From Macrostomum lignano (taxonomy: Eukaryota): 64,000 nt of DNA. Each line of letters opens with the position of its first letter. The first letter of the stretch is position 1. The position numbers and the translations under genes were made by a program. Under the pieces are notes generated by a model. That model saw only the letters and a program-made list of their open reading frames with translations, did no database searches and was not told where the DNA came from. Where the stretch lies: positions 62,001 through 126,000 of the forward strand of contig NIVC01001234.1 of NCBI GenBank assembly GCA_002269645.1, given 5' to 3'. Positions 6,446 to 30,400 of the stretch are shown in pieces.

Positions 6446-6689
6446 TCTGCATTTCTTCTTAGCTTAGAGTTCTTGCATCTGCAGCTGCGAACGCGAAGGT
6501 GTAGTCATCTTCCCAATCACAGCGGAGGTCGGGTCGTAGCATTTGTCTGTGACAAGCATTCCACAATCAGGAAGTGTTTCTCTCTATGAATGAATGAACT
6601 GAATGAAAACTGAATGAATGAAATTGATGAAGTTCAGTCACAGGAAAGTAGGCATATGTTATTCCTACGATCAAACTTTCTGAAGATCC

Positions 6690-7590: not shown

Positions 7591-9467
7591 ATCTTTTCTC
7601 TCATCCCATCTCTCATCTCTCATCTTCTTTTACCTCTCCTTTCCACTCTCATCAGACCCGCAGCCATAAGCTGTATTCTTATCCGGCTCTTTAGGTAAAA
7701 AAGTTTGCTAATCCCTGGTTTAGAGCCGCTGGGAATACCTCCGGTTAAAAGTGGGAGCACCAATAATGCTACAAGCAATTTAATGGTACCAGGCTAATCG
7801 TCAAGCAACTCTTTCCGAGTGTGATTGAGGAAATCGTGACAGGATCTGGCAAAAGGCAATCTGTGTTTATTAGGAGAATTTCAAAGATTCCATCAAACTT
7901 GTCTTTTTGTTCAAGCAAGTACGAATCCCAGTGAAGGCTTTCTTTTCCCTGACCAAAACAAAGACCAGGGACAGTCGCTAAGAATTTTCGCAATCAACTT
8001 TGAGTCGCCCTGCTTCTCATATGGCCAACTTTATGTTGAATGCTCATGCGTTGGAACTGCAGCTGGCCTCCTCATCTTTGCTCCCCTGAGAAACAATGAA
8101 TTTGGCTTTGCTGATGCCTTGCATACTTACTCTGCTTAGTTTCTCTAGAAAGTTTAAACAGTATAATTACTTGTCTCCTCTCACTTAGTCTTAGACCAGG
8201 GGCGCAGCCAGGAATTCTTTATGGGGGGGGGGGCAAGACTACTTTAAAAGAGGGGCCCAGCCTCTGGAAAGATGGGCGCAAAGCCTGCTGGAAAAGGGCG
8301 CCACATGCTTTGCCAGTTGATTGGGAGGGGGCAGCAATCGCCATCGCTTCTTCATTTTACTTAAAAGCTACCAATTAATCTCAACTCCTTACTTAAAAAT
8401 ATATGCAATTAGATTATTGTCCTGATGCTGTAAGTGTTTGTATAATCTTAGATTCTATTCTTTGTATTCTATCCAAAAATATACTTTGTAACACAAATTT
8501 ACTCCAAGTTTTTATTACCTCTATACTTAAACAAGTTTTTGTTTGAGTATGACTTCAGACAAAGGATTGCATACAAAAAACCCTAAGGTAGTTCCCGGGA
8601 TTTTAATTTCGCGGGTTCAACATCCGCGGATTTCAACACACATATACCGACAGACCATTTTTAGTATATAGGAATAAGAGAGGCGGATCTTAACATTTTA
8701 CTCGATAAAACGGAAAAAAGTTGTCCAAAGTCGCACAGGTGTCAAGCAGGAACTGGAGCGGGGTGGGCCAACTCAGTGTTTCTCGCGGAACTGCTGATCT
8801 TCCCCTGGGGTGGGATGCGACTCAAGACTCGCCGCTCGATCTTGGCAGCAGCTGCCAGGCGCTGGGCTCATGCACGCGCGTTCCGGAGAGCGGCCGACGG
8901 CCTGCGCCAGCAGAGGTAGAGAAGCCGCCTCGACTGTCCGCATTTTTGCTGACTCAAATTGCTGAGGCTCCACGACAAAAGTGGGGGGGGGGGGTAATTC
9001 AGGAAATCGATAGCCCGTCAAGGAAGATAAAATTGGCCAAGCCGCGCTGCGCTCGAAACTGCGCTCTCTTCTTCGAGGAGAAACTCTACAAGCTCGCGAC
9101 ATGTTACCAACCATGGCTCAAGCCGGTTGGTGCCTGCTCTTTGCAATTTGCCTGGGCGGCATAACTGCCTGTAAGTTTCTTTCAGGGTCGGTTGCATTGC
9201 GGGTAGTGTTGTCAGGAGTCAAATTACCTTCATAGCTCGTAGATGATTAGTCTCTACTCGCAGACTAAGAACTTACTCTAAAGAACTGCTTGGATTGTTT
9301 TGGTGGTGAGGATATCTTTAAAATTCTGTGGGATGTTTCCATATCTTGGCGCATATTTATAGTTAATTGAAAGTAATGCGCCGCTGCAAGCAGATTATCC
9401 TGCAAGCACGTGATTGGCACAAGTTGTCATCCAGCAGTGACTGAATAGAGCAATTGTATAGCTCCTA

Positions 9468-12400
9468 ATGCTGACGAAGAATGCCTTAGTGGTGCTACTC
9501 GTAGTATGAGACTATTGTATCATAATTACTGTTGCATCTTTTCAATCCATGTTGTCAGATTTTATAGCATCTGCGCCTATTCAGTATTTGCCTTTAGGAA
9601 TGAAACCAAAATTGTAGAAGGATTTTTATGGGAAATATTTCTACGAAGAGCAATTATCACTTTTGCGGTGGTGATTAAAACTTTCAAACTTTGTACATCG
9701 AAGCTCAAAGAAAGAACAAAACGTCCTAAAAAACACGCATTGTAGCCCATGGCTTCGAATACAAAGGATGCTACAAAGATAGTAGAAATCGTGACCTGCC
9801 AAAACTGGCACAGTCATCGTCCAGCATGAGCGTGGAGAGGTGTGGCCGTCTGTGCAGCTCGTACCGCTACTTCGGTGTGCAGTTCTCCAAGGAGTGCTGG
9901 TGCGGCAACTCGTACGGCAAGCACGGAAAGCGACCAGGACGCGAGTGCAACATGGCCTGCAGAGGCAACTCCAGGGAGAAGTGCGGCTCTCACTGGAGAA
10001 ATAATGTCTATGCAACTCGGTCGACTGGCTCCCGTGAGTACATTCTCCGCATCAACACCTGAAAACGCTTGACATGACGCTGGCCAGAAAAGAGAGTACA
10101 GTATCGATATATACGCGCCGCTTGCCCTTGTAGACAGCACATGAACTGCAGGGTCCACCAATGAAAGGGTTAGCTTTAAAATCGCTGTCTCTCTAGGCTC
10201 AGTGGATCTAAAATAAACATTACTAGCTCGTACGTTTAGTTCTCCTTGACAGTGGTCGGCAAAAATTTAAGGTCTATTTCAACTTGCAAGTAGCCTATTT
10301 AATGATGACATGAGTGGTGGCCGATAGAATTACAAAATACAGTTACGTACTACGTACATGAAAGCTTAGAGAGGTGGCCAGACAAAGCGAAGAAAACGGG
10401 AGAGAATGATGTGCATTTACGATGCGTGCGGATAATATAGGTTACTTAGTTAGTGCCCAGAGTTTAGCATTTGGCCCTACCCCAAACACTATACGAGCGT
10501 ATATCCAAGTTTCCTTGATGCATCTGTAATATAGCCCATTTTGATGAATCCTGACGGTGTCTACACGGATCAGAGTCCCTGATCTAAAAATATCCCGATG
10601 CCTTTGTCATCAGTTTAACTCCTTACGCATTTTGTGCTCACCAAATTCAATTGTGTTTTACAAATGCTCACTTGGCTTACTTTATTAAATTCGATATGGA
10701 TTTAAAGTTTTTAATATGCAGTTGCCGTTTCTAATATGCAACACTAGCTCGTAAAACTTACACTCGAATTTTGAATAATATTATGAAACGTTAAATGCCC
10801 ACGAGCGCTAGGCTGCAAACGGGTGAGATCTACACCGTCAAGCCTGTCGAGCTACAAGTCCAAGGTCGGTCAGTGCTTCGAGTTCCGAGTGACTGGTCGA
10901 TTGAGAGGAAACGTGTGGGGGAGCGGGATCTACACTGCCGACTCGTCGCTTAGCAAGGCCGCCGTACATGCAGGAATTGTGAGGAACGGCCAGACAAAGT
11001 ACATCCGTGTTCGAGTGTTGAGGGGTCGCAGCTCGTACCGATCCACTAGACGCAACGGCGTCAAGACGAGACGCTACGGCAGATACAGGCTTAGCTACAA
11101 GTTCATCGGCTCGCGATCGGTTCCTAGCAAGAAGCCTAGGTGTAAGTTTCGCTAGTCGTATGTCATGGTATTCTGAAGCTGTTTATAATGAAAATCACTT
11201 TGATTTCGATAAAATATACATTTCCTATCGCCGACTGAGTTTTACGTTGCATGTGTAATCACAATGAAGAAAAAGTATAATATTTTTTGCAGCATGCCCA
11301 TCAGGATCAAGGTTGTCTGTGACCTCGCGTCGCACCTGCCGCTGTGCTCCGATATCTCCTGGACGGAAGTTGGGCTCGCTGATCTTTGTTATTGACATTA
11401 CCGGAAGCATGGGAAGCGTGATTAACTCGGTAAAGAGCAACATCCGGCGAATTCTCTCTGCTAACACTCGATTTAGCAACTATGTTGTTGCAACCTTTGG
11501 CGATCCGTATGTGAGGCGAGTAATCAAGACGAGGAGTATCACTGCTGTGAGAAACTTCCTGAAAAGATTGTCTGCCAGAGGAGGCGGTGACTGTCCCGAG
11601 TACGCTATGTCAGGAGCTCTGGATGCTGCAAAGAGCGCGAACTCGAACTCCGTCATGCTCCTGTTTACTGACGCTTCAGCCAAGGACAAGAGACGAGTGG
11701 GCCAGGTGTCTTCACTGGCGAAGAGGAAGCGAATTCGAGTGTTTACCGTCGAGAGCGGAAACATGTGTGGAAAAGCGCCAGAGTTTAAGCAGTTGGCCCG
11801 GAAGTCTTTTGGAGAGGTCTCCCGACTACGATCTGGCACTTTCAACAAGGTAGGGCGTTTTATTAGAGATTCAGCTATGGCATGGCTTGCTCACGGACAA
11901 CAAGAACAACGACAAACGTATAAGTATTTTCTACTCGTATTTCTATCCACAGTTGATGGAGTTCCTCAGACGCGCCGTAAAAGGAAGAATCAGCTTCAGT
12001 GCATTCCCAAGAAGCCCGTCGGCGCTCAAAAGGGCTCTCAGAGGCAGTGAGTATTTCTTTTTAACATACCTTACATACGAGCAACAGTTGCAGCCAAGAG
12101 GATTATCCGTGGCATTGAAACCTACTCGTAATTTACTACTTATGGTATGAAACAGGCGCGGAGCCTGTTAAATTGGATAATAATTTACTATAAAAGGGAC
12201 TCCACAAACATCAGTTACCTGACAGTAACGATTTCAATAATATAATTGCAGAATGCCGTTGTCGAATTGTCAGGCACCGTCGATGCAAACGAGTTTCATC
12301 GCGTGAGTGCCAGATTATTTTTTATGGTGCAATACCACTATCTAAATTCGGCTTTTAAATAATATTATGAAACGTTAAATGCCCACGAGCGCTAGGCTGC

Positions 12401-15400
12401 AAACGGGTGAGATCTACACCGTCAAGCCTGTCGAGCTACAAGTCCAAGGTCGGTCAGTGCTTCGAGTTCCGAGTGACTGGTCGATTGAGAGGAAACGTGT
12501 GGGGGAGCGGGATCTACACTGCCGACTCGTCGCTTAGCAAGGCCGCCGTACATGCAGGAATTGTGAGGAACGGCCAGACAAAGTACATCCGTGTTCGAGT
12601 GTTGAGGGGTCGCAGCTCGTACCGATCCACTAGACGCAACGGCGTCAAGACGAGACGCTACGGCAGATACAGGCTTAGCTACAAGTTCATCGGCTCGCGA
12701 TCGGTTCCTAGCAAGAAGCCTAGGTGTAAGTTTCGCTAGTCGTATGTCATGGTATTCTGAAGCTGTTTATAATGAAAATCACTTTGATTTCGATAAAATA
12801 TACATTTCCTATCGCCGACTGAGTTTTACGTTGCATGTGTAATCACAATGAAGAAAAAGTATAATATTTTTTGCAGCATGCCCATCAGGATCAAGGTTGT
12901 CTGTGACCTCGCGTCGCACCTGCCGCTGTGCTCCGATATCTCCTGGACGGAAGTTGGGCTCGCTGATCTTTGTTATTGACATTACCGGAAGCATGGGAAG
13001 CGTGATTAACTCGGTAAAGAGCAACATCCGGCGAATTCTCTCTGCTAACACTCGATTTAGCAACTATGTTGTTGCAACCTTTGGCGATCCGTATGTGAGG
13101 CGAGTAATCAAGACGAGGAGTATCACTGCTGTGAGAAACTTCCTGAAAAGATTGTCTGCCAGAGGAGGCGGTGACTGTCCCGAGTACGCTATGTCAGGAG
13201 CTCTGGATGCTGCAAAGAGCGCGAACTCGAACTCCGTCATGCTCCTGTTTACTGACGCTTCAGCCAAGGACAAGAGACGAGTGGGCCAGGTGTCTTCACT
13301 GGCGAAGAGGAAGCGAATTCGAGTGTTTACCGTCGAGAGCGGAAACATGTGTGGAAAAGCGCCAGAGTTTAAGCAGTTGGCCCGGAAGTCTTTTGGAGAG
13401 GTCTCCCGACTACGATCTGGCACTTTCAACAAGGTAGGGCGTTTTATTAGAGATTCAGCTATGGCATGGCTTGCTCACGGACAACAAGAACAACGACAAA
13501 CGTATAAGTATTTTCTACTCGTATTTCTATCCACAGTTGATGGAGTTCCTCAGACGCGCCGTAAAAGGAAGAATCAGCTTCAGTGCATTCCCAAGAAGCC
13601 CGTCGGCGCTCAAAAGGGCTCTCAGAGGCAGTGAGTATTTCTTTTTAACATACCTTACATACGAGCAACAGTTGCAGCCAAGAGGATTATCCGTGGCATT
13701 GAAACCTACTCGTAATTTACTACTTATGGTATGAAACAGGCGCGGAGCCTGTTAAATTGGATAATAATTTACTATAAAAGGGACTCCACAAACATCAGTT
13801 ACCTGACAGTAACGATTTCAATAATATAATTGCAGAATGCCGTTGTCGAATTGTCAGGCACCGTCGATGCAAACGAGTTTCATCGCGTGAGTGCCAGATT
13901 ATTTTTTATGGTGCAATACCACTATCTAAATTCGGCTTTTAAATAATATTATGAAACGTTAAATGCCCACGAGCGCTAGGCTGCAAACGGGTGAGATCTA
14001 CACCGTCAAGCCTGTCGAGCTACAAGTCCAAGGTCGGTCAGTGCTTCGAGTTCCGAGTGACTGGTCGATTGAGAGGAAACGTGTGGGGGAGCGGGATCTA
14101 CACTGCCGACTCGTCGCTTAGCAAGGCCGCCGTACATGCAGGAATTGTGAGGAACGGCCAGACAAAGTACATCCGTGTTCGAGTGTTGAGGGGTCGCAGC
14201 TCGTACCGATCCACTAGACGCAACGGCGTCAAGACGAGACGCTACGGCAGATACAGGCTTAGCTACAAGTTCATCGGCTCGCGATCGGTTCCTAGCAAGA
14301 AGCCTAGGTGTAAGTTTCGCTAGTCGTATGTCATGGTATTCTGAAGCTGTTTATAATGAAAATCACTTTGATTTCGATAAAATATACATTTCCTATCGCC
14401 GACTGAGTTTTACGTTGCATGTGTAATCACAATGAAGAAAAAGTATAATATTTTTTGCAGCATGCCCATCAGGATCAAGGTTGTCTGTGACCTCGCGTCG
14501 CACCTGCCGCTGTGCTCCGATATCTCCTGGACGGAAGTTGGGCTCGCTGATCTTTGTTATTGACATTACCGGAAGCATGGGAAGCGTGATTAACTCGGTA
14601 AAGAGCAACATCCGGCGAATTCTCTCTGCTAACACTCGATTTAGCAACTATGTTGTTGCAACCTTTGGCGATCCGTATGTGAGGCGAGTAATCAAGACGA
14701 GGAGTATCACTGCTGTGAGAAACTTCCTGAAAAGATTGTCTGCCAGAGGAGGCGGTGACTGTCCCGAGTACGCTATGTCAGGAGCTCTGGATGCTGCAAA
14801 GAGCGCGAACTCGAACTCCGTCATGCTCCTGTTTACTGACGCTTCAGCCAAGGACAAGAGACGAGTGGGCCAGGTGTCTTCACTGGCGAAGAGGAAGCGA
14901 ATTCGAGTGTTTACCGTCGAGAGCGGAAACATGTGTGGAAAAGCGCCAGAGTTTAAGCAGTTGGCCCGGAAGTCTTTTGGAGAGGTCTCCCGACTACGAT
15001 CTGGCACTTTCAACAAGGTAGGGCGTTTTATTAGAGATTCAGCTATGGCATGGCTTGCTCACGGACAACAAGAACAACGACAAACGTATAAGTATTTTCT
15101 ACTCGTATTTCTATCCACAGTTGATGGAGTTCCTCAGACGCGCCGTAAAAGGAAGAATCAGCTTCAGTGCATTCCCAAGAAGCCCGTCGGCGCTCAAAAG
15201 GGCTCTCAGAGGCAGTGAGTATTTCTTTTTAACATACCTTACATACGAGCAACAGTTGCAGCCAAGAGGATTATCCGTGGCATTGAAACCTACTCGTAAT
15301 TTACTACTTATGGTATGAAACAGGCGCGGAGCCTGTTAAATTGGATAATAATTTACTATAAAAGGGACTCCACAAACATCAGTTACCTGACAGTAACGAT

Positions 15401-18400
15401 TTCAATAATATAATTGCAGAATGCCGTTGTCGAATTGTCAGGCACCGTCGATGCAAACGAGTTTCATCGCGTGAGTGCCAGATTATTTTTTATGGTGCAA
15501 TACCACTATCTAAATTCGGCTTTTAAATAATATTATGAAACGTTAAATGCCCACGAGCGCTAGGCTGCAAACGGGTGAGATCTACACCGTCAAGCCTGTC
15601 GAGCTACAAGTCCAAGGTCGGTCAGTGCTTCGAGTTCCGAGTGACTGGTCGATTGAGAGGAAACGTGTGGGGGAGCGGGATCTACACTGCCGACTCGTCG
15701 CTTAGCAAGGCCGCCGTACATGCAGGAATTGTGAGGAACGGCCAGACAAAGTACATCCGTGTTCGAGTGTTGAGGGGTCGCAGCTCGTACCGATCCACTA
15801 GACGCAACGGCGTCAAGACGAGACGCTACGGCAGATACAGGCTTAGCTACAAGTTCATCGGCTCGCGATCGGTTCCTAGCAAGAAGCCTAGGTGTAAGTT
15901 TCGCTAGTCGTATGTCATGGTATTCTGAAGCTGTTTATAATGAAAATCACTTTGATTTCGATAAAATATACATTTCCTATCGCCGACTGAGTTTTACGTT
16001 GCATGTGTAATCACAATGAAGAAAAAGTATAATATTTTTTGCAGCATGCCCATCAGGATCAAGGTTGTCTGTGACCTCGCGTCGCACCTGCCGCTGTGCT
16101 CCGATATCTCCTGGACGGAAGTTGGGCTCGCTGATCTTTGTTATTGACATTACCGGAAGCATGGGAAGCGTGATTAACTCGGTAAAGAGCAACATCCGGC
16201 GAATTCTCTCTGCTAACACTCGATTTAGCAACTATGTTGTTGCAACCTTTGGCGATCCGTATGTGAGGCGAGTAATCAAGACGAGGAGTATCACTGCTGT
16301 GAGAAACTTCCTGAAAAGATTGTCTGCCAGAGGAGGCGGTGACTGTCCCGAGTACGCTATGTCAGGAGCTCTGGATGCTGCAAAGAGCGCGAACTCGAAC
16401 TCCGTCATGCTCCTGTTTACTGACGCTTCAGCCAAGGACAAGAGACGAGTGGGCCAGGTGTCTTCACTGGCGAAGAGGAAGCGAATTCGAGTGTTTACCG
16501 TCGAGAGCGGAAACATGTGTGGAAAAGCGCCAGAGTTTAAGCAGTTGGCCCGGAAGTCTTTTGGAGAGGTCTCCCGACTACGATCTGGCACTTTCAACAA
16601 GGTAGGGCGTTTTATTAGAGATTCAGCTATGGCATGGCTTGCTCACGGACAACAAGAACAACGACAAACGTATAAGTATTTTCTACTCGTATTTCTATCC
16701 ACAGTTGATGGAGTTCCTCAGACGCGCCGTAAAAGGAAGAATCAGCTTCAGTGCATTCCCAAGAAGCCCGTCGGCGCTCAAAAGGGCTCTCAGAGGCAGT
16801 GAGTATTTCTTTTTAACATACCTTACATACGAGCAACAGTTGCAGCCAAGAGGATTATCCGTGGCATTGAAACCTACTCGTAATTTACTACTTATGGTAT
16901 GAAACAGGCGCGGAGCCTGTTAAATTGGATAATAATTTACTATAAAAGGGACTCCACAAACATCAGTTACCTGACAGTAACGATTTCAATAATATAATTG
17001 CAGAATGCCGTTGTCGAATTGTCAGGCACCGTCGATGCAAACGAGTTTCATCGCGTGAGTGCCAGATTATTTTTTATGGTGCAATACCACTATCTAAATT
17101 CGGCTTTTAAATAATATTATGAAACGTTAAATGCCCACGAGCGCTAGGCTGCAAACGGGTGAGATCTACACCGTCAAGCCTGTCGAGCTACAAGTCCAAG
17201 GTCGGTCAGTGCTTCGAGTTCCGAGTGACTGGTCGATTGAGAGGAAACGTGTGGGGGAGCGGGATCTACACTGCCGACTCGTCGCTTAGCAAGGCCGCCG
17301 TACATGCAGGAATTGTGAGGAACGGCCAGACAAAGTACATCCGTGTTCGAGTGTTGAGGGGTCGCAGCTCGTACCGATCCACTAGACGCAACGGCGTCAA
17401 GACGAGACGCTACGGCAGATACAGGCTTAGCTACAAGTTCATCGGCTCGCGATCGGTTCCTAGCAAGAAGCCTAGGTGTAAGTTTCGCTAGTCGTATGTC
17501 ATGGTATTCTGAAGCTGTTTATAATGAAAATCACTTTGATTTCGATAAAATATACATTTCCTATCGCCGACTGAGTTTTACGTTGCATGTGTAATCACAA
17601 TGAAGAAAAAGTATAATATTTTTTGCAGCATGCCCATCAGGATCAAGGTTGTCTGTGACCTCGCGTCGCACCTGCCGCTGTGCTCCGATATCTCCTGGAC
17701 GGAAGTTGGGCTCGCTGATCTTTGTTATTGACATTACCGGAAGCATGGGAAGCGTGATTAACTCGGTAAAGAGCAACATCCGGCGAATTCTCTCTGCTAA
17801 CACTCGATTTAGCAACTATGTTGTTGCAACCTTTGGCGATCCGTATGTGAGGCGAGTAATCAAGACGAGGAGTATCACTGCTGTGAGAAACTTCCTGAAA
17901 AGATTGTCTGCCAGAGGAGGCGGTGACTGTCCCGAGTACGCTATGTCAGGAGCTCTGGATGCTGCAAAGAGCGCGAACTCGAACTCCGTCATGCTCCTGT
18001 TTACTGACGCTTCAGCCAAGGACAAGAGACGAGTGGGCCAGGTGTCTTCACTGGCGAAGAGGAAGCGAATTCGAGTGTTTACCGTCGAGAGCGGAAACAT
18101 GTGTGGAAAAGCGCCAGAGTTTAAGCAGTTGGCCCGGAAGTCTTTTGGAGAGGTCTCCCGACTACGATCTGGCACTTTCAACAAGGTAGGGCGTTTTATT
18201 AGAGATTCAGCTATGGCATGGCTTGCTCACGGACAACAAGAACAACGACAAACGTATAAGTATTTTCTACTCGTATTTCTATCCACAGTTGATGGAGTTC
18301 CTCAGACGCGCCGTAAAAGGAAGAATCAGCTTCAGTGCATTCCCAAGAAGCCCGTCGGCGCTCAAAAGGGCTCTCAGAGGCAGTGAGTATTTCTTTTTAA

Positions 18401-21400
18401 CATACCTTACATACGAGCAACAGTTGCAGCCAAGAGGATTATCCGTGGCATTGAAACCTACTCGTAATTTACTACTTATGGTATGAAACAGGCGCGGAGC
18501 CTGTTAAATTGGATAATAATTTACTATAAAAGGGACTCCACAAACATCAGTTACCTGACAGTAACGATTTCAATAATATAATTGCAGAATGCCGTTGTCG
18601 AATTGTCAGGCACCGTCGATGCAAACGAGTTTCATCGCGTGAGTGCCAGATTATTTTTTATGGTGCAATACCACTATCTAAATTCGGCTTTTAAATAATA
18701 TTATGAAACGTTAAATGCCCACGAGCGCTAGGCTGCAAACGGGTGAGATCTACACCGTCAAGCCTGTCGAGCTACAAGTCCAAGGTCGGTCAGTGCTTCG
18801 AGTTCCGAGTGACTGGTCGATTGAGAGGAAACGTGTGGGGGAGCGGGATCTACACTGCCGACTCGTCGCTTAGCAAGGCCGCCGTACATGCAGGAATTGT
18901 GAGGAACGGCCAGACAAAGTACATCCGTGTTCGAGTGTTGAGGGGTCGCAGCTCGTACCGATCCACTAGACGCAACGGCGTCAAGACGAGACGCTACGGC
19001 AGATACAGGCTTAGCTACAAGTTCATCGGCTCGCGATCGGTTCCTAGCAAGAAGCCTAGGTGTAAGTTTCGCTAGTCGTATGTCATGGTATTCTGAAGCT
19101 GTTTATAATGAAAATCACTTTGATTTCGATAAAATATACATTTCCTATCGCCGACTGAGTTTTACGTTGCATGTGTAATCACAATGAAGAAAAAGTATAA
19201 TATTTTTTGCAGCATGCCCATCAGGATCAAGGTTGTCTGTGACCTCGCGTCGCACCTGCCGCTGTGCTCCGATATCTCCTGGACGGAAGTTGGGCTCGCT
19301 GATCTTTGTTATTGACATTACCGGAAGCATGGGAAGCGTGATTAACTCGGTAAAGAGCAACATCCGGCGAATTCTCTCTGCTAACACTCGATTTAGCAAC
19401 TATGTTGTTGCAACCTTTGGCGATCCGTATGTGAGGCGAGTAATCAAGACGAGGAGTATCACTGCTGTGAGAAACTTCCTGAAAAGATTGTCTGCCAGAG
19501 GAGGCGGTGACTGTCCCGAGTACGCTATGTCAGGAGCTCTGGATGCTGCAAAGAGCGCGAACTCGAACTCCGTCATGCTCCTGTTTACTGACGCTTCAGC
19601 CAAGGACAAGAGACGAGTGGGCCAGGTGTCTTCACTGGCGAAGAGGAAGCGAATTCGAGTGTTTACCGTCGAGAGCGGAAACATGTGTGGAAAAGCGCCA
19701 GAGTTTAAGCAGTTGGCCCGGAAGTCTTTTGGAGAGGTCTCCCGACTACGATCTGGCACTTTCAACAAGGTAGGGCGTTTTATTAGAGATTCAGCTATGG
19801 CATGGCTTGCTCACGGACAACAAGAACAACGACAAACGTATAAGTATTTTCTACTCGTATTTCTATCCACAGTTGATGGAGTTCCTCAGACGCGCCGTAA
19901 AAGGAAGAATCAGCTTCAGTGCATTCCCAAGAAGCCCGTCGGCGCTCAAAAGGGCTCTCAGAGGCAGTGAGTATTTCTTTTTAACATACCTTACATACGA
20001 GCAACAGTTGCAGCCAAGAGGATTATCCGTGGCATTGAAACCTACTCGTAATTTACTACTTATGGTATGAAACAGGCGCGGAGCCTGTTAAATTGGATAA
20101 TAATTTACTATAAAAGGGACTCCACAAACATCAGTTACCTGACAGTAACGATTTCAATAATATAATTGCAGAATGCCGTTGTCGAATTGTCAGGCACCGT
20201 CGATGCAAACGAGTTTCATCGCGTGAGTGCCAGATTATTTTTTATGGTGCAATACCACTATCTAAATTCGGCTTTTAAATAATATTATGAAACGTTAAAT
20301 GCCCACGAGCGCTAGGCTGCAAACGGGTGAGATCTACACCGTCAAGCCTGTCGAGCTACAAGTCCAAGGTCGGTCAGTGCTTCGAGTTCCGAGTGACTGG
20401 TCGATTGAGAGGAAACGTGTGGGGAGCGGGATCTACACTGCCGACTCGTCGCTTAGCAAGGCCGCCGTACATGCAGGAATTGTGAGGAACGGCCAGACAA
20501 AGTACATCCGTGTTCGAGTGTTGAGGGGTCGCAGCTCGTACCGATCCACTAGACGCAACGGCGTCAAGACGAGACGCTACGGCAGATACAGGCTTAGCTA
20601 CAAGTTCATCGGCTCGCGATCGGTTCCTAGCAAGAAGCCTAGGTGTAAGTTTCGCTAGTCGTATGTCATGGTATTCTGAAGCTGTTTATAATGAAAATCA
20701 CTTTGATTTCGATAAAATATACATTTCCTATCGCCGACTGAGTTTTACGTTGCATGTGTAATCACAATGAAGAAAAAGTATAATATTTTTTGCAGCATGC
20801 CCATCAGGATCAAGGTTGTCTGTGACCTCGCGTCGCACCTGCCGCTGTGCTCCGATATCTCCTGGACGGAAGTTGGGCTCGCTGATCTTTGTTATTGACA
20901 TTACCGGAAGCATGGGAAGCGTGATTAACTCGGTAAAGAGCAACATCCGGCGAATTCTCTCTGCTAACACTCGATTTAGCAACTATGTTGTTGCAACCTT
21001 TGGCGATCCGTATGTGAGGCGAGTAATCAAGACGAGGAGTATCACTGCTGTGAGAAACTTCCTGAAAAGATTGTCTGCCAGAGGAGGCGGTGACTGTCCC
21101 GAGTACGCTATGTCAGGAGCTCTGGATGCTGCAAAGAGCGCGACTCGAACTCCGTCATGCTCCTGTTTACTGACGCTTCAGCCAAGGACAAGAGACGAGT
21201 GGGCCAGGTGTCTTCACTGGCGAAGAGGAAGCGAATTCGAGTGTTTACCGTCGAGAGCGGAAACATGTGTGGAAAAGCGCCAGAGTTTAAGCAGTTGGCC
21301 CGGAAGTCTTTTGGAGAGGTCTCCCGACTACGATCTGGCACTTTCAACAAGGTAGGGCGTTTTATTAGAGATTCAGCTATGGCATGGCTTGCTCACGGAC

Positions 21401-24400
21401 AACAAGAACAACGACAAACGTATAAGTATTTTCTACTCGTATTTCTATCCACAGTTGATGGAGTTCCTCAGACGCGCCGTAAAAGGAAGAATCAGCTTCA
21501 GTGCATTCCCAAGAAGCCCGTCGGCGCTCAAAAGGGCTCTCAGAGGCAGTGAGTATTTCTTTTTAACATACCTTACATACGAGCAACAGTTGCAGCCAAG
21601 AGGATTATCCGTGGCATTGAAACCTACTCGTAATTTACTACTTATGGTATGAAACAGGCGCGGAGCCTGTTAAATTGGATAATAATTTACTATAAAAGGG
21701 ACTCCACAAACATCAGTTACCTGACAGTAACGATTTCAATAATATAATTGCAGAATGCCGTTGTCGAATTGTCAGGCACCGTCGATGCAAACGAGTTTCA
21801 TCGCGTGAGTGCCAGATTATTTTTTATGGTGCAATACCACTATCTAAATTCGGCTTTTAAATAATATTATGAAACGTTAAATGCCCACGAGCGCTAGGCT
21901 GCAAACGGGTGAGATCTACACCGTCAAGCCTGTCGAGCTACAAGTCCAAGGTCGGTCAGTGCTTCGAGTTCCGAGTGACTGGTCGATTGAGAGGAAACGT
22001 GTGGGGGAGCGGGATCTACACTGCCGACTCGTCGCTTAGCAAGGCCGCCGTACATGCAGGAATTGTGAGGAACGGCCAGACAAAGTACATCCGTGTTCGA
22101 GTGTTGAGGGGTCGCAGCTCGTACCGATCCACTAGACGCAACGGCGTCAAGACGAGACGCTACGGCAGATACAGGCTTAGCTACAAGTTCATCGGCTCGC
22201 GATCGGTTCCTAGCAAGAAGCCTAGGTGTAAGTTTCGCTAGTCGTATGTCATGGTATTCTGAAGCTGTTTATAATGAAAATCACTTTGATTTCGATAAAA
22301 TATACATTTCCTATCGCCGACTGAGTTTTACGTTGCATGTGTAATCACAATGAAGAAAAAGTATAATATTTTTTGCAGCATGCCCATCAGGATCAAGGTT
22401 GTCTGTGACCTCGCGTCGCACCTGCCGCTGTGCTCCGATATCTCCTGGACGGAAGTTGGGCTCGCTGATCTTTGTTATTGACATTACCGGAAGCATGGGA
22501 AGCGTGATTAACTCGGTAAAGAGCAACATCCGGCGAATTCTCTCTGCTAACACTCGATTTAGCAACTATGTTGTTGCAACCTTTGGCGATCCGTATGTGA
22601 GGCGAGTAATCAAGACGAGGAGTATCACTGCTGTGAGAAACTTCCTGAAAAGATTGTCTGCCAGAGGAGGCGGTGACTGTCCCGAGTACGCTATGTCAGG
22701 AGCTCTGGATGCTGCAAAGAGCGCGGACTCGAACTCCGTCATGCTCCTGTTTACTGACGCTTCAGCCAAGGACAAGAGACGAGTGGGCCAGGTGTCTTCA
22801 CTGGCGAAGAGGAAGCGAATTCGAGTGTTTACCGTCGAGAGCGGAAACATGTGTGGAAAAGCGCCAGAGTTTAAGCAGTTGGCCCGGAAGTCTTTTGGAG
22901 AGGTCTCCCGACTACGATCTGGCACTTTCAACAAGGTAGGGCGTTTTATTAGAGATTCAGCTATGGCATGGCTTGCTCACGGACAACAAGAACAACGACA
23001 AACGTATAAGTATTTTCTACTCGTATTTCTATCCACAGTTGATGGAGTTCCTCAGACGCGCCGTAAAAGGAAGAATCAGCTTCAGCGCATTCCAAGAAGC
23101 CCGTCGGCGCTCAAAAGGCTCTCAGAGGCAGTGAGTATTTCTTTTTAACATACCTTACATACGAGCAACAGTTGCAGCCAAGAGGATTATCCGTGGCATT
23201 GAAACCTACTCGTAATTTACTACTTATGGTATGAAACAGGCGCGGAGCCTGTTAAATTGGATAATAATTTACTATAAAAGGGACTCCACAAACATCAGTT
23301 ACCTGACAGTAACGATTTCAATAATATAATTGCAGAATGCCGTTGTCGAATTGTCAGGCACCGTCGATGCAAACGAGTTTCATCGCGTGAGTGCCAGATT
23401 ATTTTTTATGGTGCAATACCACTATCTAAATTCGGCTTTTAAATAATATTATGAAACGTTAAATGCCCACGAGCGCTAGGCTGCAAACGGGTGAGATCTA
23501 CACCGTCAAGCCTGTCGAGCTACAAGTCCAAGGTCGGTCAGTGCTTCGAGTTCCGAGTGACTGGTCGATTGAGAGGAAACGTGTGGGGGAGCGGGATCTA
23601 CACTGCCGACTCGTCGCTTAGCAAGGCCGCCGTACATGCAGGAATCGTGAGGAACGGCCAGACAAAGTACATCCGTGTTCGAGTGTTGAGGGGTCGCAGC
23701 TCGTACCGATCCACTAGACGCAACGGCGTCAAGACGAGACGCTACGGCAGATACAGGCTTAGCTACAAGTTCATCGGCTCGCGATCGGTTCCTAGCAAGA
23801 AGCCTAGGTGTAAGTTTCGCTAGTCGTATGTCATGGTATTCTGAAGCTGTTTATAATGAAAATCACTTTGATTTCGATAAAATATACATTTCCTATCGCC
23901 GACTGAGTTTTACGTTGCATGTGTAATCACAATGAAGAAAAAGTATAATATTTTTTGCAGCATGCCCATCAGGATCAAGGTTGTCTGTGACCTCGCGTCG
24001 CACCTGCCGCTGTGCTCCGATATCTCCTGGACGGAAGTTGGGCTCGCTGATCTTTGTTATTGACATTACCGGAAGCATGGGAAGCGTGATTAACTCGGTA
24101 AAGAGCAACATCCGGCGAATTCTCTCTGCTAACACTCGATTTAGCAACTATGTTGTTGCAACCTTTGGCGATCCGTATGTGAGGCGAGTAATCAAGACGA
24201 GGAGTATCACTGCTGTGAGAAACTTCCTGAAAAGATTGTCTGCCAGAGGAGGCGGTGACTGTCCCGAGTACGCTATGTCAGGAGCTCTGGATGCTGCAAA
24301 GAGCGCGGACTCGAACTCCGTCATGCTCCTGTTTACTGACGCTTCAGCCAAGGACAAGAGACGAGTGGGCCAGGTGTCTTCACTGGCGAAGAGGAAGCGA

Positions 24401-27400
24401 ATTCGAGTGTTTACCGTCGAGAGCGGAAACATGTGTGGAAAAGCGCCAGAGTTTAAGCAGTTGGCCCGGAAGTCTTTTGGAGAGGTCTCCCGACTACGAT
24501 CTGGCACTTTCAACAAGGTAGGGCGTTTTATTAGAGATTCAGCTATGGCATGGCTTGCTCACGGACAACAAGAACAACGACAAACGTATAAGTATTTTCT
24601 ACTCGTATTTCTATCCACAGTTGATGGAGTTCCTCAGACGCGCCGTAAAAGGAAGAATCAGCTTCAGCGCATTTCCAAGAAGCCCGTCGGCGCTCAAAAA
24701 GGCTCTCAGAGGCAGTGAGTATTTCTTTTTAACATACCTTACATACGAGCAACAGTTGCAGCCAAGAGGATTATCCGTGGCATTGAAACCTACTCGTAAT
24801 TTACTACTTATGGTATGAAACAGGCGCGGAGCCTGTTAAATTGGATAATAATTTACTATAAAAGGGACTCCACAAACATCAGTTACCTGACAGTAACGAT
24901 TTCAATAATATAATTGCAGAATGCCGTTGTCGAATTGTCAGGCACCGTCGATGCAAACGAGTTTCATCGCGTGAGTGCCAGATTATTTTTTATGGTGCAA
25001 TACCACTATCTAAATTCGGCTTTTAAAAACTATTAAACTAATCTATTAATTAAACTATAATTAAACTATAAAATTATTAAACTATATCTACTAATAGATG
25101 TCTCAATGAACAATGGTTTATAGACTAGACTAATCCAAGAGAGGTGGGCGATGCCAGCCGATTGAATCTAGTTGGAGCCTTTAATATTCGTAGTCGTAAC
25201 TAAAATGACGCCCTTCTGACCTTCCAGCGGCCGGAGTGAAGTACGTCGGCTGCTTTAAGGACAATCGCTACAGGGATTTGCCGGTAGTTTACACTGCCAA
25301 CTAAAAGACGACAAAGGCTTACTGCTTCCGCTATTGTCGAGCCAAGGGCTACAGGTACTTTGGTCTGCAAAACGGCAATGCGTGCACCTGCGGAAACACC
25401 GTCGGTCGGTATGGAAAAGCGAAGAGCAAGGATTGCGCCAGGTCCACCTGTAAGGGCGACAAGAGGTCCAAATGTGGTGGACCATGGAGGAACAGCGTCT
25501 TCACAACCGGACTGAAGCCCAAGAGCTTCAAGAGTAAGTGTGCAGTCAAGCAGAAAATTCGCTTTCCACGCTCGCTCGTAGGCTCGTACGGTATATTAGA
25601 TATTTTTGAATGTAAAACGAGATTGCTCTGTACGGTTTGGATGGGGTTTTGCTGACCTGCATGTGCCCACTATTTCTCTTTTAAGCACCTGGAATGTCTC
25701 ACATTGGCTGCTTTGTTGACGGCCGGAGACGCGATCTTCCAACTCTGGCAGGAAAAGGCAGCATGACTGTTGGAAGGTGCTACGGACTATGCAAGAAAAA
25801 GGGATTCCGATTCTTTGGCGTTCAGATAGGAAAACAGTGCTGGTGCGGCAACCACTACGGTCGCTACGGCCGACGCGACAAACGCGAGTGCCGCTACCAG
25901 TGCAGAGGAGACAAGACGACCTACTGCGGAGGCGCGTGGAGAAACAATGTCTACGCGACGGGTGTTGTCGTCGCCAGCAAAGGTAACCGAGTCTGTCAAC
26001 AGGTTTACGCTTGTAGCTTTCTGGAGATCCAAGCAATCCTAGTGTACTGCTGTTTTTCGTTGCGCCATCTAGCCAGTTAGCCAGCAGCACTACTAATAGA
26101 TGTCTCAATGAACAATGGTTTAGAGACTAGACTAATCCAAGAGAGGTGGGCGATGCCAGCCGATTGAATCTAGTTGGAGCCTTTAATATTCGTAGTCGTA
26201 ACTAAAATGACGCCCTTCTGACCTTCCAGCGGCCGGAGTGAAGTACGTCGGCTGCTTTAAGGACAATCGCTACAGGGATTTGCCGGTAGTTTACACTGCC
26301 AACTACAAGACGACAAAGGCTTACTGCTTCCGCTATTGTCGAGCCAAGGGCTACAGGTACTTTGGTCTGCAAAACGGCAATGCGTGCACCTGCGGAAACA
26401 CCGTCGGTCGGTATGGAAAAGCGAAGAGCAAGGATTGCGCCAGGTCCACCTGTAAGGGCGACAAGAGGTCCAAATGTGGTGGACCATGGAGGAACAGCGT
26501 CTTCACAACCGGACTGAAGCCCAAGAGCTTCAAGAGTAAGTGTGCAGTCAAACGGAAAATTCGCTTTCCACGCTCGCTCGTAGGCTCGTAGGGTACATAA
26601 GACATTTTGTAAAGTAAAACGGTGAAGTGATACATTTTGGCCCTGAAAGTTTCAATCCAGTTTGAATGTATTTCCAACCAATGAACGCGCTCCAGCAAGC
26701 AAAAGCTGAGCACACGATCCCAGTCTTAGCTAATGAAAAGTAGACATCCTTTCCCTACAACAGACTGAACCTTCGGTTCCCCCGAACAATTAGAACCTAC
26801 CATAGAATTGAGTTAATCTCGAGATTGCGAACACCAAATACAATACAACGGTCAGTAAGTTAACATCAATTGATTGCATCATCAGGAAAAGTTAGTCGAA
26901 TCCGCCGCCTTAGTTATTTGGCTCTCACATTGGTAATTGAAGTTATTATTGAGCTTAGTAGTGAGAGATCAGAAGACCAAAGACACCCAAGTTATAGACA
27001 TATATAAAAAATTTCAACGGGCTGGCTCTGTCCGTGTCTTGGATTAGGAGCCAACCAGCTGGGGTTTTACTGACCTGCGTGTGCCCACTATTTCTTTTTT
27101 AAGCACCTGAATGTCTCACATTGGCTGCTTTGTTGACGGCCGGAGGCGCGATCTTCCAACTGTGGGAGGAAAAGGCAGCATAACTGTTGGAAGGTGCTAC
27201 GGACTGTGCAAGAAAAAGGGATTCCGATTCTTTGGCGTTCAGATAGGAAAACAGTGCTGGTGCGGCAACCACTACGGTCGCTACGGCCGACGCGACAAAC
27301 GCGAGTGCCGCTACCAGTGCAGAGGAGACAAGACGACCTACTGTGGCGGCTCCTGGAGAAACGACGTGTACGCTACCGGACTCGAAGAGCACGCCTCCGG

Positions 27401-30400
27401 AGTTACCCTACTTGGCTGCTTCCGCGACAATTCGAAGCGCGACTTGCCCCTTGTACACGGCGCCGGTCACCGGACCACAAAGGCGTACTGTCTGAAGTAC
27501 TGCAAGTCTCGCGGCTACAGGTACTTTGGCCTCCAGGCTGGATCTGCGTGCACCTGCGGCAACAAATATGGCAGCTTTGGCCGAGTCAATGCAAAGCAGT
27601 GCAGAACGCGCTGTAGAGGCGACAAAAGACGAACCTGCGGCGGCTCTTGGAGAAACTCTGTCTACTCGACTGGAATCGGCAGCAAGCCTGTTCGTCGTGA
27701 GTACAACAGTACAGATTCGCAATTGATTGCTTTTTTGTCCACCTAGCTCGTGTTTATATTAGTTTGCAGCTCTCAGTTGAGAACTATGCGATGCCTCACT
27801 AATTGCGCGCGCCGTTTCTCTTCCTTCCATAAATACGAGTAGTTTCAAGCAATATAAGGTGGCTATTTTGAAATTGTGCGCAAATTAGTCTGACATCTTG
27901 AAACTTTAAATGCATTAAATATCATCAGCGAGAGCGTGGGCGTCCAAGAGTTGAGCCTTTCTCATAAGTTGTTTACATAAACGACAGCAAATAATGTGTA
28001 CAGTAGTAGTCTGTCGCTACCGCTTTCAGTGCCCGGATTGAAGCATCTCGGCTGCTATCTGGACAAGAGCTCCAGAGATCTTAGAAAGCTGGTTCTCTCC
28101 GGATCAGTTACTGTGCCAAAGTGCTACAAGGCGTGCAAAGCCAGGAAATATCGCTTCTTCGGTGTGCAAAATGGCTACCAGTGCTGGTGCGGCAACCACT
28201 ATGGCAGGTACAGAATCCGATCAAACTTGGAGTGCAGAGTACAGTGCAGAGGAGACAAGTCGACCTACTGCGGAGGCGCGTGGAGAAACAATGTCTACGC
28301 GACGGGTGTTGTCGTCGCCAGCAAAGGTAACCGAGTCTGTCAACAGGTTTACGCTTGTAGCTTTCTGGAGATCCAAGCAATCCTAGTGTACTGCTGTTTT
28401 TCGTTGCGCCATCTAGCCATTTAGCCAGCAGCACTACTAATAGATGTCTCAATGAACAATGGTTTATAGACTAGACTAATCCAAGAGAGGTGGGCGATGC
28501 CAGCCGATTGAATCTAGTTGGAGCCTTTAATATCGTAGTCGTAACTAAAATGACGCCCTTCTGACCTTCCAGCGGCCGGAGTGAAGTACGTCGGCTGCTT
28601 CAAGGACAATCGCTACAGGGATTTGCCGGTAGTTTACACTGCCAACTACAAGACGACAAAGGCTTACTGCTTCCGCTATTGTCGAGCCAAGGGCTACAGG
28701 TACTTTGGTCTGCAAAACGGCAATGCGTGCACCTGCGGAAACACCGTCGGTCGGTATGGAAAAGCGAAGAGCAAGGATTGCGCCAGGTCCACCTGTAAGG
28801 GCGACAAGAGGTCCAAATGTGGTGGACCATGGAGGAACAGCGTCTTCACAACCGGACTGAAGCCCAAGAGCTTCAAGAGTAAGTGTGCAGTCAAGCAGAA
28901 AATTCGCTTTCCACGCTCGCTCGTAGGCTCGTACGGTATATTAGATATTTTTGAATGTAAAACGAGATTGCTCTGTACGGTTTGGATGGGGTTTTGCTGA
29001 CCTGCATGTGCCCACTATTTCTCTTTTAAGCACCTGGAATGTCTCACATTGGCTGCTTTGTTGACGGCCGGAGACGCGATCTTCCAACTCTGGCAGGAAA
29101 AGGCAGCATGACTGTTGGAAGGTGCTACGGACTATGCAAGAAAAAGGGATTCCGATTCTTTGGCGTTCAGATAGGAAAACAGTGCTGGTGCGGCAACCAC
29201 TACGGTCGCTACGGCCGACGCGACAAACGCGAGTGCCGCTACCAGTGCAGAGGAGACAAGACGACCTACTGCGGAGGCGCGTGGAGAAACAATGTCTACG
29301 CGACGGGTGTTGTCGTCGCCAGCAAAGGTAACCGAGTCTGTCAACAGGTTTACGCTTGTAGCTTTCTGGAGATCCAAGCAATCCTAGTGTACTGCTGTTT
29401 TTCGTTGCGCCATCTAGCCAGTTAGCCAGCAGCACTACTAATAGATGTCTCAATGAACAATGGTTTAGAGACTAGACTAATCCAAGAGAGGTGGGCGATG
29501 CCAGCCGATTGAATCTAGTTGGAGCCTTTAATATTCGTAGTCGTAACTAAAATGACGCCCTTCTGACCTTCCAGCGGCCGGAGTGAAGTACGTCGGCTGC
29601 TTTAAGGACAATCGCTACAGGGATTTGCCGGTAGTTTACACTGCCAACTACAAGACGACAAAGGCTTACTGCTTCCGCTATTGTCGAGCCAAGGGCTACA
29701 GGTACTTTGGTCTGCAAAACGGCAATGCGTGCACCTGCGGAAACACCGTCGGTCGGTATGGAAAGCGAAGAGCAAGGATTGCGCCAGGTCCACCTGTAAG
29801 GGCGACAAGAGGTCCAAATGTGGTGGACCATGGAGGAACAGCGTCTTCACAACCGGACTGAAGCCCAAGAGCTTCAAGAGTAAGTGTGCAGTCAAACGGA
29901 AAATTCGCTTTCCACGCTCGCTCGTAGGCTCGTAGGGTACATAAGACATTTTGTAAAGTAAAACGGTGAAGTGATACATTTTGGCCCTGAAAGTTTCAAT
30001 CCAGTTTGAATGTATTTCCAACCAATGAACGCGCTCCAGCAAGCAAAAGCTGAGCACACGATCCCAGTCTTAGCTAATGAAAAGTAGACATCCTTTCCCT
30101 ACAACAGACTGAACCTTCGGTTCCCCCGAACAATTAGAACCTACCATAGACTTGAGTTAATCTCGAGATTGCGAACACCAAATACAATACAACGGTCAGT
30201 AAGTTAACATCAATTGATTGCATCATCAGGAAAAGTTAGTCGAATCCGCCGCCTTAGTTATTTGGCTCTCACATTGGTAATTGAAGTTATTATTGAGCTT
30301 AGTAGTGAGAGATCAGAAGACCAAAGACACCCAAGTTATAGACATATATAAAAAATTTCAACGGGCTGGCTCTGTCCGTGTCTTGGATTAGGAGCCAACC

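What the first reader, a model, noticed from the sequence alone, without database searches (positions are those of the whole stretch)
10774..25027. Coding macrosatellite: nine cassettes identical across introns as well as exons
Seen: copies 1-6 look base-identical, including all four introns. Copies 8-9 differ only by a few substitutions (AAC>GAC, AGT>AGC, TTC>TTT, AGG>AAG, ATT>ATC), which accumulate toward the 3' end. The unit starts and ends inside a phase-1 intron, so any gain or loss of units keeps the frame. Inference: a very recent expansion or strong concerted evolution, making protein valency a copy-number variable. The true copy number may differ from nine if the assembly collapsed or inflated the array.
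Basis: partly seen in the sequence, partly recalled or inferred. Interest (0 to 1): 0.7.

Follow-up and report, generated by a model that had tools for sequence, protein, structure and literature searches.

The report
Tandem four-exon cassette array in flatworm gene
A large secreted-protein gene of the flatworm Macrostomum lignano holds nine near-identical 1.6-kb four-exon cassettes in tandem, but base errors in the assembly and a sister contig with only one cassette leave the perfect identity and the count of nine unproven.

Summary
The array is in the sequence: nine head-to-tail units of 1,584 bp at 10774-25025. Units 1-6 are 100% identical, introns included.

Each unit has four exons (1,032 nt, 344 aa) encoding an LCCL domain and a hemicentin-type VWA domain. 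The unit junction lies in a phase-1 intron, so unit gain or loss keeps the frame.

Three sit exactly on sites where units differ by a substitution, the mark of consensus calling on mixed read pile-ups. As assembled, the frame breaks in unit 7.

The host gene runs 9101-33041 on the + strand: signal peptide, WSC, (LCCL-VWA)x9, 12 WSC, VWA, WSC. That is about 4,741 aa if intact, and each unit has pI 11.8.

A Mlig_3_7 contig (NIVC01000784.1) carries the same locus, 96.6-99.6% identical in the flanks, with exactly one unit. UniProt models named as M. lignano (P0001, P0002) show at least two units in tandem.

Verdict: a real, young tandem amplification of an exon cassette, of the same kind as human LPA KIV-2. 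Copy number and per-unit identity need reads. Modest interest.

The parts
9101..9170 (+). Exon 1 of the host gene. It holds the start codon and the signal peptide (MLPTMAQAGWCLLFAICLGGITA) and ends in phase 1.
   Evidence: tblastn of the P0003 N-terminus is 100% identical at 9080-9169, with a GTAAGT donor at 9171. The signal peptide is judged by inspection.
9746..10033 (+). Exon 2, the N-terminal WSC domain. It is a phase 1-1 exon.
   Evidence: Pfam WSC scores 2.3e-18 on P0003.
10774..25025 (+). Tandem array of nine 1,584-bp cassettes. Unit starts are 10774, 12358, 13942, 15526, 17110, 18694, 20278, 21860 and 23442.
10812..11141 (+). Unit 1 exon A, the LCCL domain. The same exon recurs in every unit at +1584 steps.
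   Evidence: Pfam LCCL 2.4e-14. The cochlin LCCL structure 1jbi matches at 2e-5.
11293..11849 (+). Unit 1 exon B, a Cys-rich lead-in plus a hemicentin-type VWA domain (Pfam VWA_4).
   Evidence: Pfam VWA_4 8e-34. The AF2 model has pLDDT 81 and matches VWA folds in the PDB with probability 1.0. Invariant motifs are shown.
11953..12046 (+). Unit 1 exon C, a basic linker (LMEFLRRAVKGRISFSAFPRSPSALKRALRG).
   Evidence: The same join is used in UniProt model P0002.
12252..12302 (+). Unit 1 exon D, a Cys/Arg-rich linker (KCRCRIVRHRRCKRVSS). Its phase-1 donor leads into the 93-nt intron that holds the unit junction.
   Evidence: The join is confirmed by P0002.
20278..21859 (+). Unit 7 (1,582 bp). It has 1-bp deletions at 20420 (G5>G4, exon A) and at 21142 (unit position 867, the A/G variant site, exon B). 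The frame is broken, with a stop after 56 codons of the unit.
21860..23441 (+). Unit 8 (1,582 bp). It has substitutions at 22726 (A>G, Asn>Asp) and 23086 (T>C, silent). It has 1-bp deletions at 23091 and 23116, exactly on the two sites that are substituted in unit 9.
23442..25025 (+). Unit 9 (1,584 bp, intact frame). It has five substitutions at 23646, 24308, 24668, 24674 and 24700, giving N227D and R323K plus three silent changes.
25088..31639 (+). A second coding macro-repeat: two copies of a 3,346-bp cassette, 99.75% identical. Each copy has WSC exons in the order B, A, B, A'+C, D, for 12 WSC domains in all. Exons are 25228-25533, 25686-25982, 26230-26535, ~27103-27696, 28030-28326, 28573-28878, 29031-29327, 29575-29879, 30448-31041 and 31375-31671, all phase 1-1.
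   Evidence: Pfam WSC scores range from 1e-17 to 7e-36.
31744..32626 (+). An old diverged copy of the B-C-D part of the cassette: VWA_4 exon 31744-32306, linker exons 32389-32482 and 32576-32626. It is 53% identical in protein to the unit and has the same intron phases.
   Evidence: Pfam VWA_4 4.9e-29.
32770..33041 (+). The last exon, a C-terminal WSC domain with stop codon TAA at 33039-33041.
   Evidence: Pfam WSC 7e-17.

Best explanation
The region is a genuine tandem amplification of a four-exon cassette (LCCL domain, hemicentin-type VWA domain, two basic linker exons). It lies inside a roughly 24-kb gene of Macrostomum lignano that encodes a very large, secreted, strongly cationic modular protein.

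The protein reads: signal peptide, WSC, (LCCL-VWA)n, 12 WSC, VWA, WSC.

Shown:
- Every module boundary in the gene is a phase-1 intron.
- The unit encodes exactly 344 codons.

Inferred:
- A first duplication between two A/T-rich, partly homologous intron sites created a repeat. The sites are TCGAATTTTG|AATAATATTA and TCGGCTTTTA|AAAACTATTA.
- Unequal exchange could then expand or contract this repeat in register without damaging the reading frame.
- The amplification is young. There are no intron differences among the nine units, and six units carry one derived Asn allele.
- It differs between closely related copies of the locus, one unit against about nine.
- Each added unit adds one LCCL and one VWA binding module and about +67 net charge. 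Copy number would therefore set the valency and length of an extracellular adhesive, matrix or agglutinin-type scaffold that also carries 14 carbohydrate-binding WSC domains.

The exact count of nine, the 100% identity of units 1-6 and the frameshifts in units 7-8 are properties of a noisy, polished long-read consensus, not established biology.
For: -
- The exon model has GT-AG at all 36 exons and 1,032 nt per unit. UniProt gene model P0002 uses the same C-D-A joins.
- Domains: LCCL 2.4e-14 and VWA_4 8e-34, WSC, and a VWA fold.
- The species and the N-terminal signal peptide plus WSC come from P0003.
- The phase-1 link from unit 9 into the first WSC exon, and from exon 2 into unit 1, is shown.
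- The diverged VWA-C'-D' module has the same exon structure.
- Partial homology at the junctions is shown.
- The one-unit locus, with flanks 96.6-99.6% identical and a different WSC array structure, is shown.
- Two or more tandem units appear in UniProt models P0001 and P0002.
- Asp at unit site 867 is invariant in all relatives, so the Asn of units 1-6 is derived.
- Deletions sit on variant sites with P about 1.3e-7. The same signature is seen in WSC exon B*.
- pI is 11.8, with 80 K+R against 13 D+E per unit.
Against: - No reads were available, so copy number is unverified.
- The only other assembly copy I could read has one unit.
- As assembled, the gene is broken in six further places besides the shared B* deletion: four deletions in units 7-8, TAA at 25302-25304, and a 1-bp deletion at 27108. 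A decaying redundant copy cannot be excluded.
- No transcript, expression or functional evidence was found.
- The function is inferred from domain content and charge only.
- ML2 and Mlig_3_7 were built from the same PacBio reads, so they are not independent samples.
Confidence: 0.68

Rival explanations
1. Assembly artefact. The true locus has one or two cassettes, and the nine-unit array was inflated by the assembler or by scaffolding of a redundant, repeat-rich genome.
For: - Contig NIVC01000784.1 has exactly one unit at the same junctions.
- The window's array shows clear consensus artefacts at variant sites.
- The M. lignano genome is about 15% simple and tandem repeats, and the assembly is highly redundant.
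Against: - From general knowledge, long-read assemblers collapse tandem arrays far more often than they inflate them.
- Two unit types (Asn and Asp) and mixed pile-ups require several distinct units in the reads.
- UniProt models P0001 and P0002 contain two or more consecutive units.
- The one-unit contig is a structurally different copy of the locus. It has other indels in the flanks and a different WSC array period, 2,345 against 3,346 bp. It is not a second assembly of the same molecule.
Confidence: 0.12
2. The array is real, but this copy of the gene is a decaying redundant duplicate (pseudogene) on the extra or duplicated chromosome material of the sequenced line. In that case the frameshifts and the stop codon are genuine, and protein valency is irrelevant at this locus.
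For: - Besides the B* deletion at 29761, which is shared with the other contig, there are six coding lesions in the window: 20420, 21142, 23091, 23116, TAA at 25302-25304, and 27108.
- The TAA is a substitution, which is less typical of long-read error. It is absent from the other B exons and from the other contig.
- 180 Mb of the Mlig_3_7 assembly is duplicated blocks.
Against: - Of the six 1-bp deletions, counting B*, four lie exactly on sites where repeat copies differ. The other two are in G-runs. That is an error pattern, not a mutation pattern.
- The other contig also has two homopolymer deletions in its single unit, so such errors are common in these data.
- Units 1-6 and unit 9 are intact over more than 2,400 codons.
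Confidence: 0.15
3. The array is old and is kept uniform by continuing gene conversion or unequal exchange (concerted evolution), rather than being a recent expansion. The one-unit allele would then be a secondary contraction.
For: - The gene family is built from tandem VWA_4 modules. Paralogue P0122 has tandem VWA_4 modules with the same linkers, and a 53%-identical module sits at the 3' end of this gene.
- The edge units (8 and 9) are the divergent ones, as expected under homogenisation of an array interior.
Against: - The 5' edge unit is identical to the interior units.
- There is no intron difference in about 5 kb of intron across the nine units.
- The neighbouring WSC arrays, in the same assemblies, are only 99.5-99.75% identical.
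- The tools cannot tell expansion from contraction.
Confidence: 0.2

Closest known systems
Human LPA kringle IV type-2 coding VNTR
   Same: Both are multi-kilobase tandem units that contain whole exons and introns and are nearly identical in the introns as well. Both are in frame, make up most of the coding sequence, and let copy number set protein size. The LPA unit is 5.6 kb with 1-40 units per allele and up to 70% of the CDS (abstracts of PMC11462820 and PMC11201333). Here the array is 65% of a predicted 4,741-aa product.
   Different: The domains are unrelated (kringle against LCCL plus VWA). There are four exons per unit here, against two in LPA (the LPA figure is from my own knowledge). 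Population-level copy-number variation is documented for LPA. Here it rests on two assembly copies only.
Cochlin and vitrin (LCCL followed by VWA domains)
   Same: These are secreted extracellular proteins that combine LCCL with VWA domains. The cochlin LCCL (PDB 1jbi) is the only solved structure that matches by sequence (2e-5).
   Different: From my own knowledge, cochlin and vitrin have one LCCL and two classical VWA domains (PF00092). Here the VWA is the hemicentin-type VWA_4 (PF25106), and the PF00092 score is much weaker. LCCL and VWA alternate nine times, and WSC domains are present. This gene is not an orthologue.
Hemicentin-type VWA (Pfam VWA_4) proteins
   Same: VWA_4 is the best Pfam match (8e-34). 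The GGGDCPE and FTDASAKD motifs are invariant across relatives.
   Different: There are no immunoglobulin, EGF or fibulin modules. The domain is repeated ten times and paired with LCCL. That PF25106 covers the hemicentin N-terminal VWA is my own recollection, not tested here.
Modular extracellular genes built by shuffling of phase 1-1 exons (Patthy's rule)
   Same: Every module boundary in this gene is a phase-1 intron.
   Different: Here the shuffled unit is a four-exon block with internal introns of phases 1, 0 and 1, and it is amplified in place.

Membership tests
Coding multi-exon tandem repeat (LPA KIV-2-like coding VNTR or macrosatellite) | Head-to-tail units of 1 kb or more with very high identity | tested here: met
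   There are nine units of 1,584 bp at 99.7-100% identity.
Coding multi-exon tandem repeat (LPA KIV-2-like coding VNTR or macrosatellite) | Each unit carries whole exons, and its coding length is a multiple of three, so that copy changes keep the frame | tested here: met
   Each unit has four exons totalling 1,032 nt, and the junction lies in a phase-1 intron.
Coding multi-exon tandem repeat (LPA KIV-2-like coding VNTR or macrosatellite) | Copy number differs between alleles or individuals | tested here: inconclusive
   There are nine units in the window and one unit on NIVC01000784.1. No reads or population data were available.
Coding multi-exon tandem repeat (LPA KIV-2-like coding VNTR or macrosatellite) | The array is transcribed and translated as one open frame | tested here: inconclusive
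   Units 1-6 and unit 9 are open. Units 7 and 8 carry frameshifts that look like consensus errors. No transcript data were available.
LCCL domain (PF03815) | Match to the family profile above the curated cut-off | tested here: met
   The score is 53.7 bits against a cut-off of 22.6. The cochlin LCCL 1jbi aligns at 2e-5.
VWA domain, hemicentin type (PF25106 VWA_4) | Profile match above the cut-off and a VWA alpha/beta fold | tested here: met
   The score is 117 bits against a cut-off of 27. The AF2 model has pLDDT 81.4 and matches ITIH1, CMG2 and integrin I domains with probability 1.0 and TM 0.6-0.67.
VWA domain, hemicentin type (PF25106 VWA_4) | A canonical MIDAS metal site (DxSxS ... T ... 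D) | tested here: inconclusive
   The sequence has DxTGS, GGGDCPE and FTDASAKD, which are conserved in relatives. The first Ser is Thr, and the usual Thr position is occupied by an acidic motif. Metal binding was not testable.
WSC domain (PF01822) | Profile match above the cut-off | tested here: met
   Representative exons of all seven WSC types (N, A, B, A', C, D, E) were scanned and score 62-123 bits against a cut-off of 27.8. The remaining copies, including D', were assigned by tblastn at 94-100% identity, with B* split by its frameshift.
Cochlin/vitrin family | One N-terminal LCCL followed by two classical VWA (PF00092) domains, as an orthologous group | tested here: not met
   The architecture is WSC, (LCCL-VWA_4)x9, WSCx12, VWA_4, WSC. 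Of the top 150 hits among 1.84 billion representatives, I Pfam-scanned six, and none combined LCCL with VWA_4. Among the precomputed domain lists of the first search, only the M. lignano models do.

The most novel reading that the evidence does not exclude
The array is real and polymorphic. Within the short divergence time of two M. lignano haplotypes or homeologues (0.4-2% substitutions in the flanks), a four-exon LCCL-VWA cassette went from one to about nine copies, or the reverse. The product would be a hyper-cationic secreted lectin-like scaffold of about 4,700 aa whose valency is set by copy number. That would make it an invertebrate counterpart of LPA KIV-2. The alternating LCCL/VWA_4 architecture was not seen in any relative whose domains I checked.
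Probability: 0.4. Interest if true: 0.5.

Novelty: new member of a known kind. Interest (0 to 1): 0.3.

Why it matters
If the copy number is real and variable, the locus would be a clean, tractable example of protein valency evolving by in-frame cassette amplification. The animal has transgenesis and RNAi available.

It also shows how modular extracellular genes grow: phase-1 introns, microhomology at the first junction, then unequal exchange.

In practice it is a warning for annotation. Perfect identity inside tandem arrays of polished long-read assemblies, and frameshifts that sit on inter-copy variant sites, are consensus artefacts. They break gene models. The gene is split or left partial in both public annotations I could see.

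Tried and rejected
- TRF missed the array because its period limit is 500 bp. The repeat finder and self-BLAST were used instead.
- Fetching the contigs behind UniProt models P0001 and P0002 failed, because they are not on record.
P0001 was used instead. Of the 150 listed hits I Pfam-scanned six, and none combined LCCL with VWA_4.
- The second homologue search, with the C-terminal module, found no close match in public annotations, only M. lignano paralogues at 40-53% identity.
- The third homologue search, with WSC exon A'+C, did not return the 931-aa WSC protein annotated next to the one-unit locus. I therefore could not learn which assembly the window comes from, or fetch more copies of the locus.
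- Literature searches for this gene or for expression data found nothing that concerns this gene. An LCCL protein is expressed in adhesive organs of another flatworm, Minona (PMC6745481). That is only a lead.
- I considered whether this gene is the known adhesive protein Mlig-ap1 or Mlig-ap2 and rejected it. Mlig-ap1 is described with C-type lectin, vWD, C8 and TIL domains; for Mlig-ap2 the rejection rests on my own recollection of its domains. Neither has LCCL or WSC.
- I considered selection as the reason that all variant sites lie in exons. With five sites, P = 0.12, so this is not significant.


Full report
**Observation.** TRF did not report the array because its longest period is 500 bp. 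The repeat finder and a self-BLAST show nine head-to-tail copies of a 1,584-bp unit from 10774 to 25025.
- Units 1-6 are 100% identical over 9,504 bp.
- The repeat ends abruptly on both sides.

A base-by-base comparison of units 7-9 gave the following.
- Unit 8 has only two of them.
- Units 7 and 8 each lack two bases, at window positions 20420, 21142, 23091 and 23116.
- Every difference lies in an exon and none in the 552 nt of intron per unit. With five sites this is not significant (P = 0.12).

**Gene model of the unit.** Three-frame translation and splice-site inspection give four exons in unit 1.

| Exon | Coordinates | Content |
|---|---|---|
| A | 10812-11141 | LCCL domain |
| B | 11293-11849 | VWA domain |
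| C | 11953-12046 | basic linker |
| D | 12252-12302 | Cys/Arg-rich linker |

- All 36 exons of the array have AG/GT borders.
- The introns are 151, 103, 205 and 93 nt long, with phases 1, 0, 1 and 1.
- The coding length is 1,032 nt, or 344 codons.
- UniProt model P0002 uses the same C-D-A joins.
- Pfam gives LCCL (2.4e-14) and VWA_4 (8e-34). Cochlin LCCL 1jbi is the only PDB sequence match.
- An AlphaFold model of exon B (pLDDT 81.4) matches VWA domains of ITIH1, CMG2 and integrins at probability 1.0, with 18% identity or less.
- DxTGS, GDPY, GGGDCPE and FTDASAKD are conserved in relatives.

**Organism and whole gene.** The closest proteins are from Macrostomum lignano. They are UniProt A0A1I8JEL7 and A0A1I8JEG0 at 99% identity, and GenBank BOX15_Mlig023956g1 (P0003) at 100%.
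- P0003 supplies the N-terminus: a signal-peptide exon at 9101-9170 and a WSC exon at 9746-10033. The WSC exon joins unit 1 through a phase-1 intron.
- Downstream, exon D of unit 9 joins, again in phase 1, a run of ten WSC exons. Two of them carry two domains each, giving 12 WSC domains.
- These WSC exons form a second macro-repeat: two copies of 3,346 bp at 99.75% identity.
- The gene ends with a diverged VWA_4 exon (31744-32306) and two linker exons (32389-32482, 32576-32626). These have the same phases as exons B, C and D and are 53% identical to them in protein. A last WSC exon (32770-33041) carries the TAA stop.
- The intact product would be 4,741 aa (14,226 nt including the stop codon), summed from the exon lengths. 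The array contributes 3,096 aa of that.
- The unit is extremely basic: pI 11.8, 80 K+R against 13 D+E, 10 Cys, and no N-glycosylation sequon.

**Signs that the base-level picture is not trustworthy.** Three of the four deletions in units 7-8 fall exactly on sites where units differ by a substitution. Each gives the intersection of the two alleles.

| Site | Allele 1 | Allele 2 | Consensus in the deleted unit |
|---|---|---|---|
| 867 | GAAC | GGAC | GAC |
| 1233 | TTCCC | TTTCC | TTCC |
| 1259 | AAAAGGG | AAAAAGG | AAAAGG |

- The chance that three of four deletions hit five sites in 1,584 bp is about 1.3e-7.
- The same pattern occurs in WSC exon B*: AAAA against AAGA gives AAA at 29761. It is shared with the other contig.
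- This is what a consensus caller produces when reads from different repeat copies are piled together.
- As assembled, the frame breaks in unit 7.
- There are further lesions at 27108 (GG>G) and a TAA at 25302-25304, where all other B exons and the other contig have TAC.
- Mlig_3_7 was made with Canu from the ML2 PacBio reads and polished with Pilon on Bowtie2-mapped short reads. About 15% of the genome is simple or tandem repeat, and 180 Mb of the assembly is duplicated blocks (PMC5730564).
- Polishing with reads that map equally well to all units would also make interior units look identical. This is an inference.

**A second copy of the locus.** P0003 lies on NIVC01000784.1 of GCA_002269645.1.
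- Its flanks align to the window at 96.6-99.6% identity, with several structural differences. It is therefore another haplotype or homeologue, not the same molecule.
- It has exactly one cassette between the same two junctions.
- That unit has G, C and A at sites 867, 1227 and 1259, like unit 9. It also has one private intron change and two homopolymer deletions.
- Its WSC region has the form B followed by [A' C D B] at least 3.5 times, with a period of about 2,340 bp and 99.5% identity. It has no type-A exons.
- That is a different structure from the window, which argues against simple collapse.
- UniProt models P0001 and P0002 contain at least two consecutive Asp-type units.

**Polarity.** All relatives have Asp at the site corresponding to unit position 867. 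The Asn shared by units 1-6 is therefore derived. Units 8 and 9 and the one-unit locus keep the ancestral state. This fits amplification of one mutated unit, although contraction in the other haplotype cannot be excluded.

**Origin.** The left flank junction and the unit end share an imperfect A/T-rich similarity of about 20 nt. This is a plausible substrate for the first duplication. Unequal exchange would do the rest (inference).

**Relatives.** I Pfam-scanned six of the 150 best hits among 1.84 billion representative proteins. They were multi-LCCL proteins (9-11 domains) or multi-VWA_4 proteins, and none combined the two. In the first search, only the M. lignano models carry both domains in their precomputed lists. 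M. lignano paralogues have tandem VWA_4 modules with the same linker but no LCCL.

**Function (inferred).** The protein has a signal peptide and no membrane anchor. It carries 14 WSC domains, which from general knowledge bind carbohydrate, ten VWA domains and nine LCCL domains, and it has a very high positive charge. This suggests a secreted multivalent matrix, adhesive or agglutinin scaffold that binds polyanionic glycans or surfaces. No expression or functional data were found.

**Comparison and verdict.** The closest known kind is the coding multi-exon VNTR, best exemplified by LPA KIV-2. This is a new member of that kind in a flatworm, with a domain combination that I did not find outside M. 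lignano among the relatives I checked. It overlooked the deletions that break the frame and that reveal consensus artefacts. The count of nine and the perfect identity need read-level confirmation.

Noticed in passing
window 25088-31639: There is a second coding macro-repeat in the same gene: two copies of a 3,346-bp cassette of WSC exons at 99.75% identity. The sister contig L001 has a different higher-order unit, [A' C D B], with a period of about 2,340 bp, at least 3.5 copies, and no type-A exons.
   Followed up: yes
window 25302-25304: The first WSC exon after the array contains an in-frame TAA. The three other B-type exons in the window and all four in L001 have TAC. It is either a real nonsense change or a polishing error.
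   Followed up: partly
window 27108 and 29761; L001 about 20690: There are 1-bp deletions in WSC exons. The one at 29761 sits on a site where copies differ (A or G). It is shared with the other contig, which suggests a common read set or pipeline.
   Followed up: partly
window 10812-12302 (unit protein): The unit is extremely basic: pI 11.8, 23% Lys plus Arg, and about +67 net charge per 344-aa unit. This is unusual for LCCL and VWA domains.
   Followed up: partly
window 3903-4499, 35085-35451, 43959-44265, 47255-47563, 51394-52057, 55880-56256, 56852-57294, 62810-63285, 63666-64000: There are many minisatellites with periods of 18-159 bp, up to 29 copies, at 84-98% match. The 38-bp array at 3903-4499 lies where the window and L001 fail to align and differ in length (408 bp against 275 bp).
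   Followed up: no
window 2848-3045 (+), 39023-39865 (+), 52714-53559 (+), 58398-59123 (-): Neighbouring coding pieces include an EF-hand pair, a ligand-gated ion channel (iGluR-type) segment, and two rhodopsin-family GPCR segments (Pfam).
   Followed up: partly
window 6570-7046 (-): An ORF has a weak CCHC zinc-knuckle match (zf-CCHC, E 3.5e-4, just above the curated cut-off). It may be a retroelement gag remnant. Next to it is a 132-bp stretch (6565-6697) that is absent from L001.
   Followed up: no
L001 12269 and 12515: The single cassette of the Mlig_3_7 contig has two homopolymer deletions in exon B. This probably explains why GenBank annotates the gene as partial with a frameshifted tail (P0003).
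   Followed up: yes
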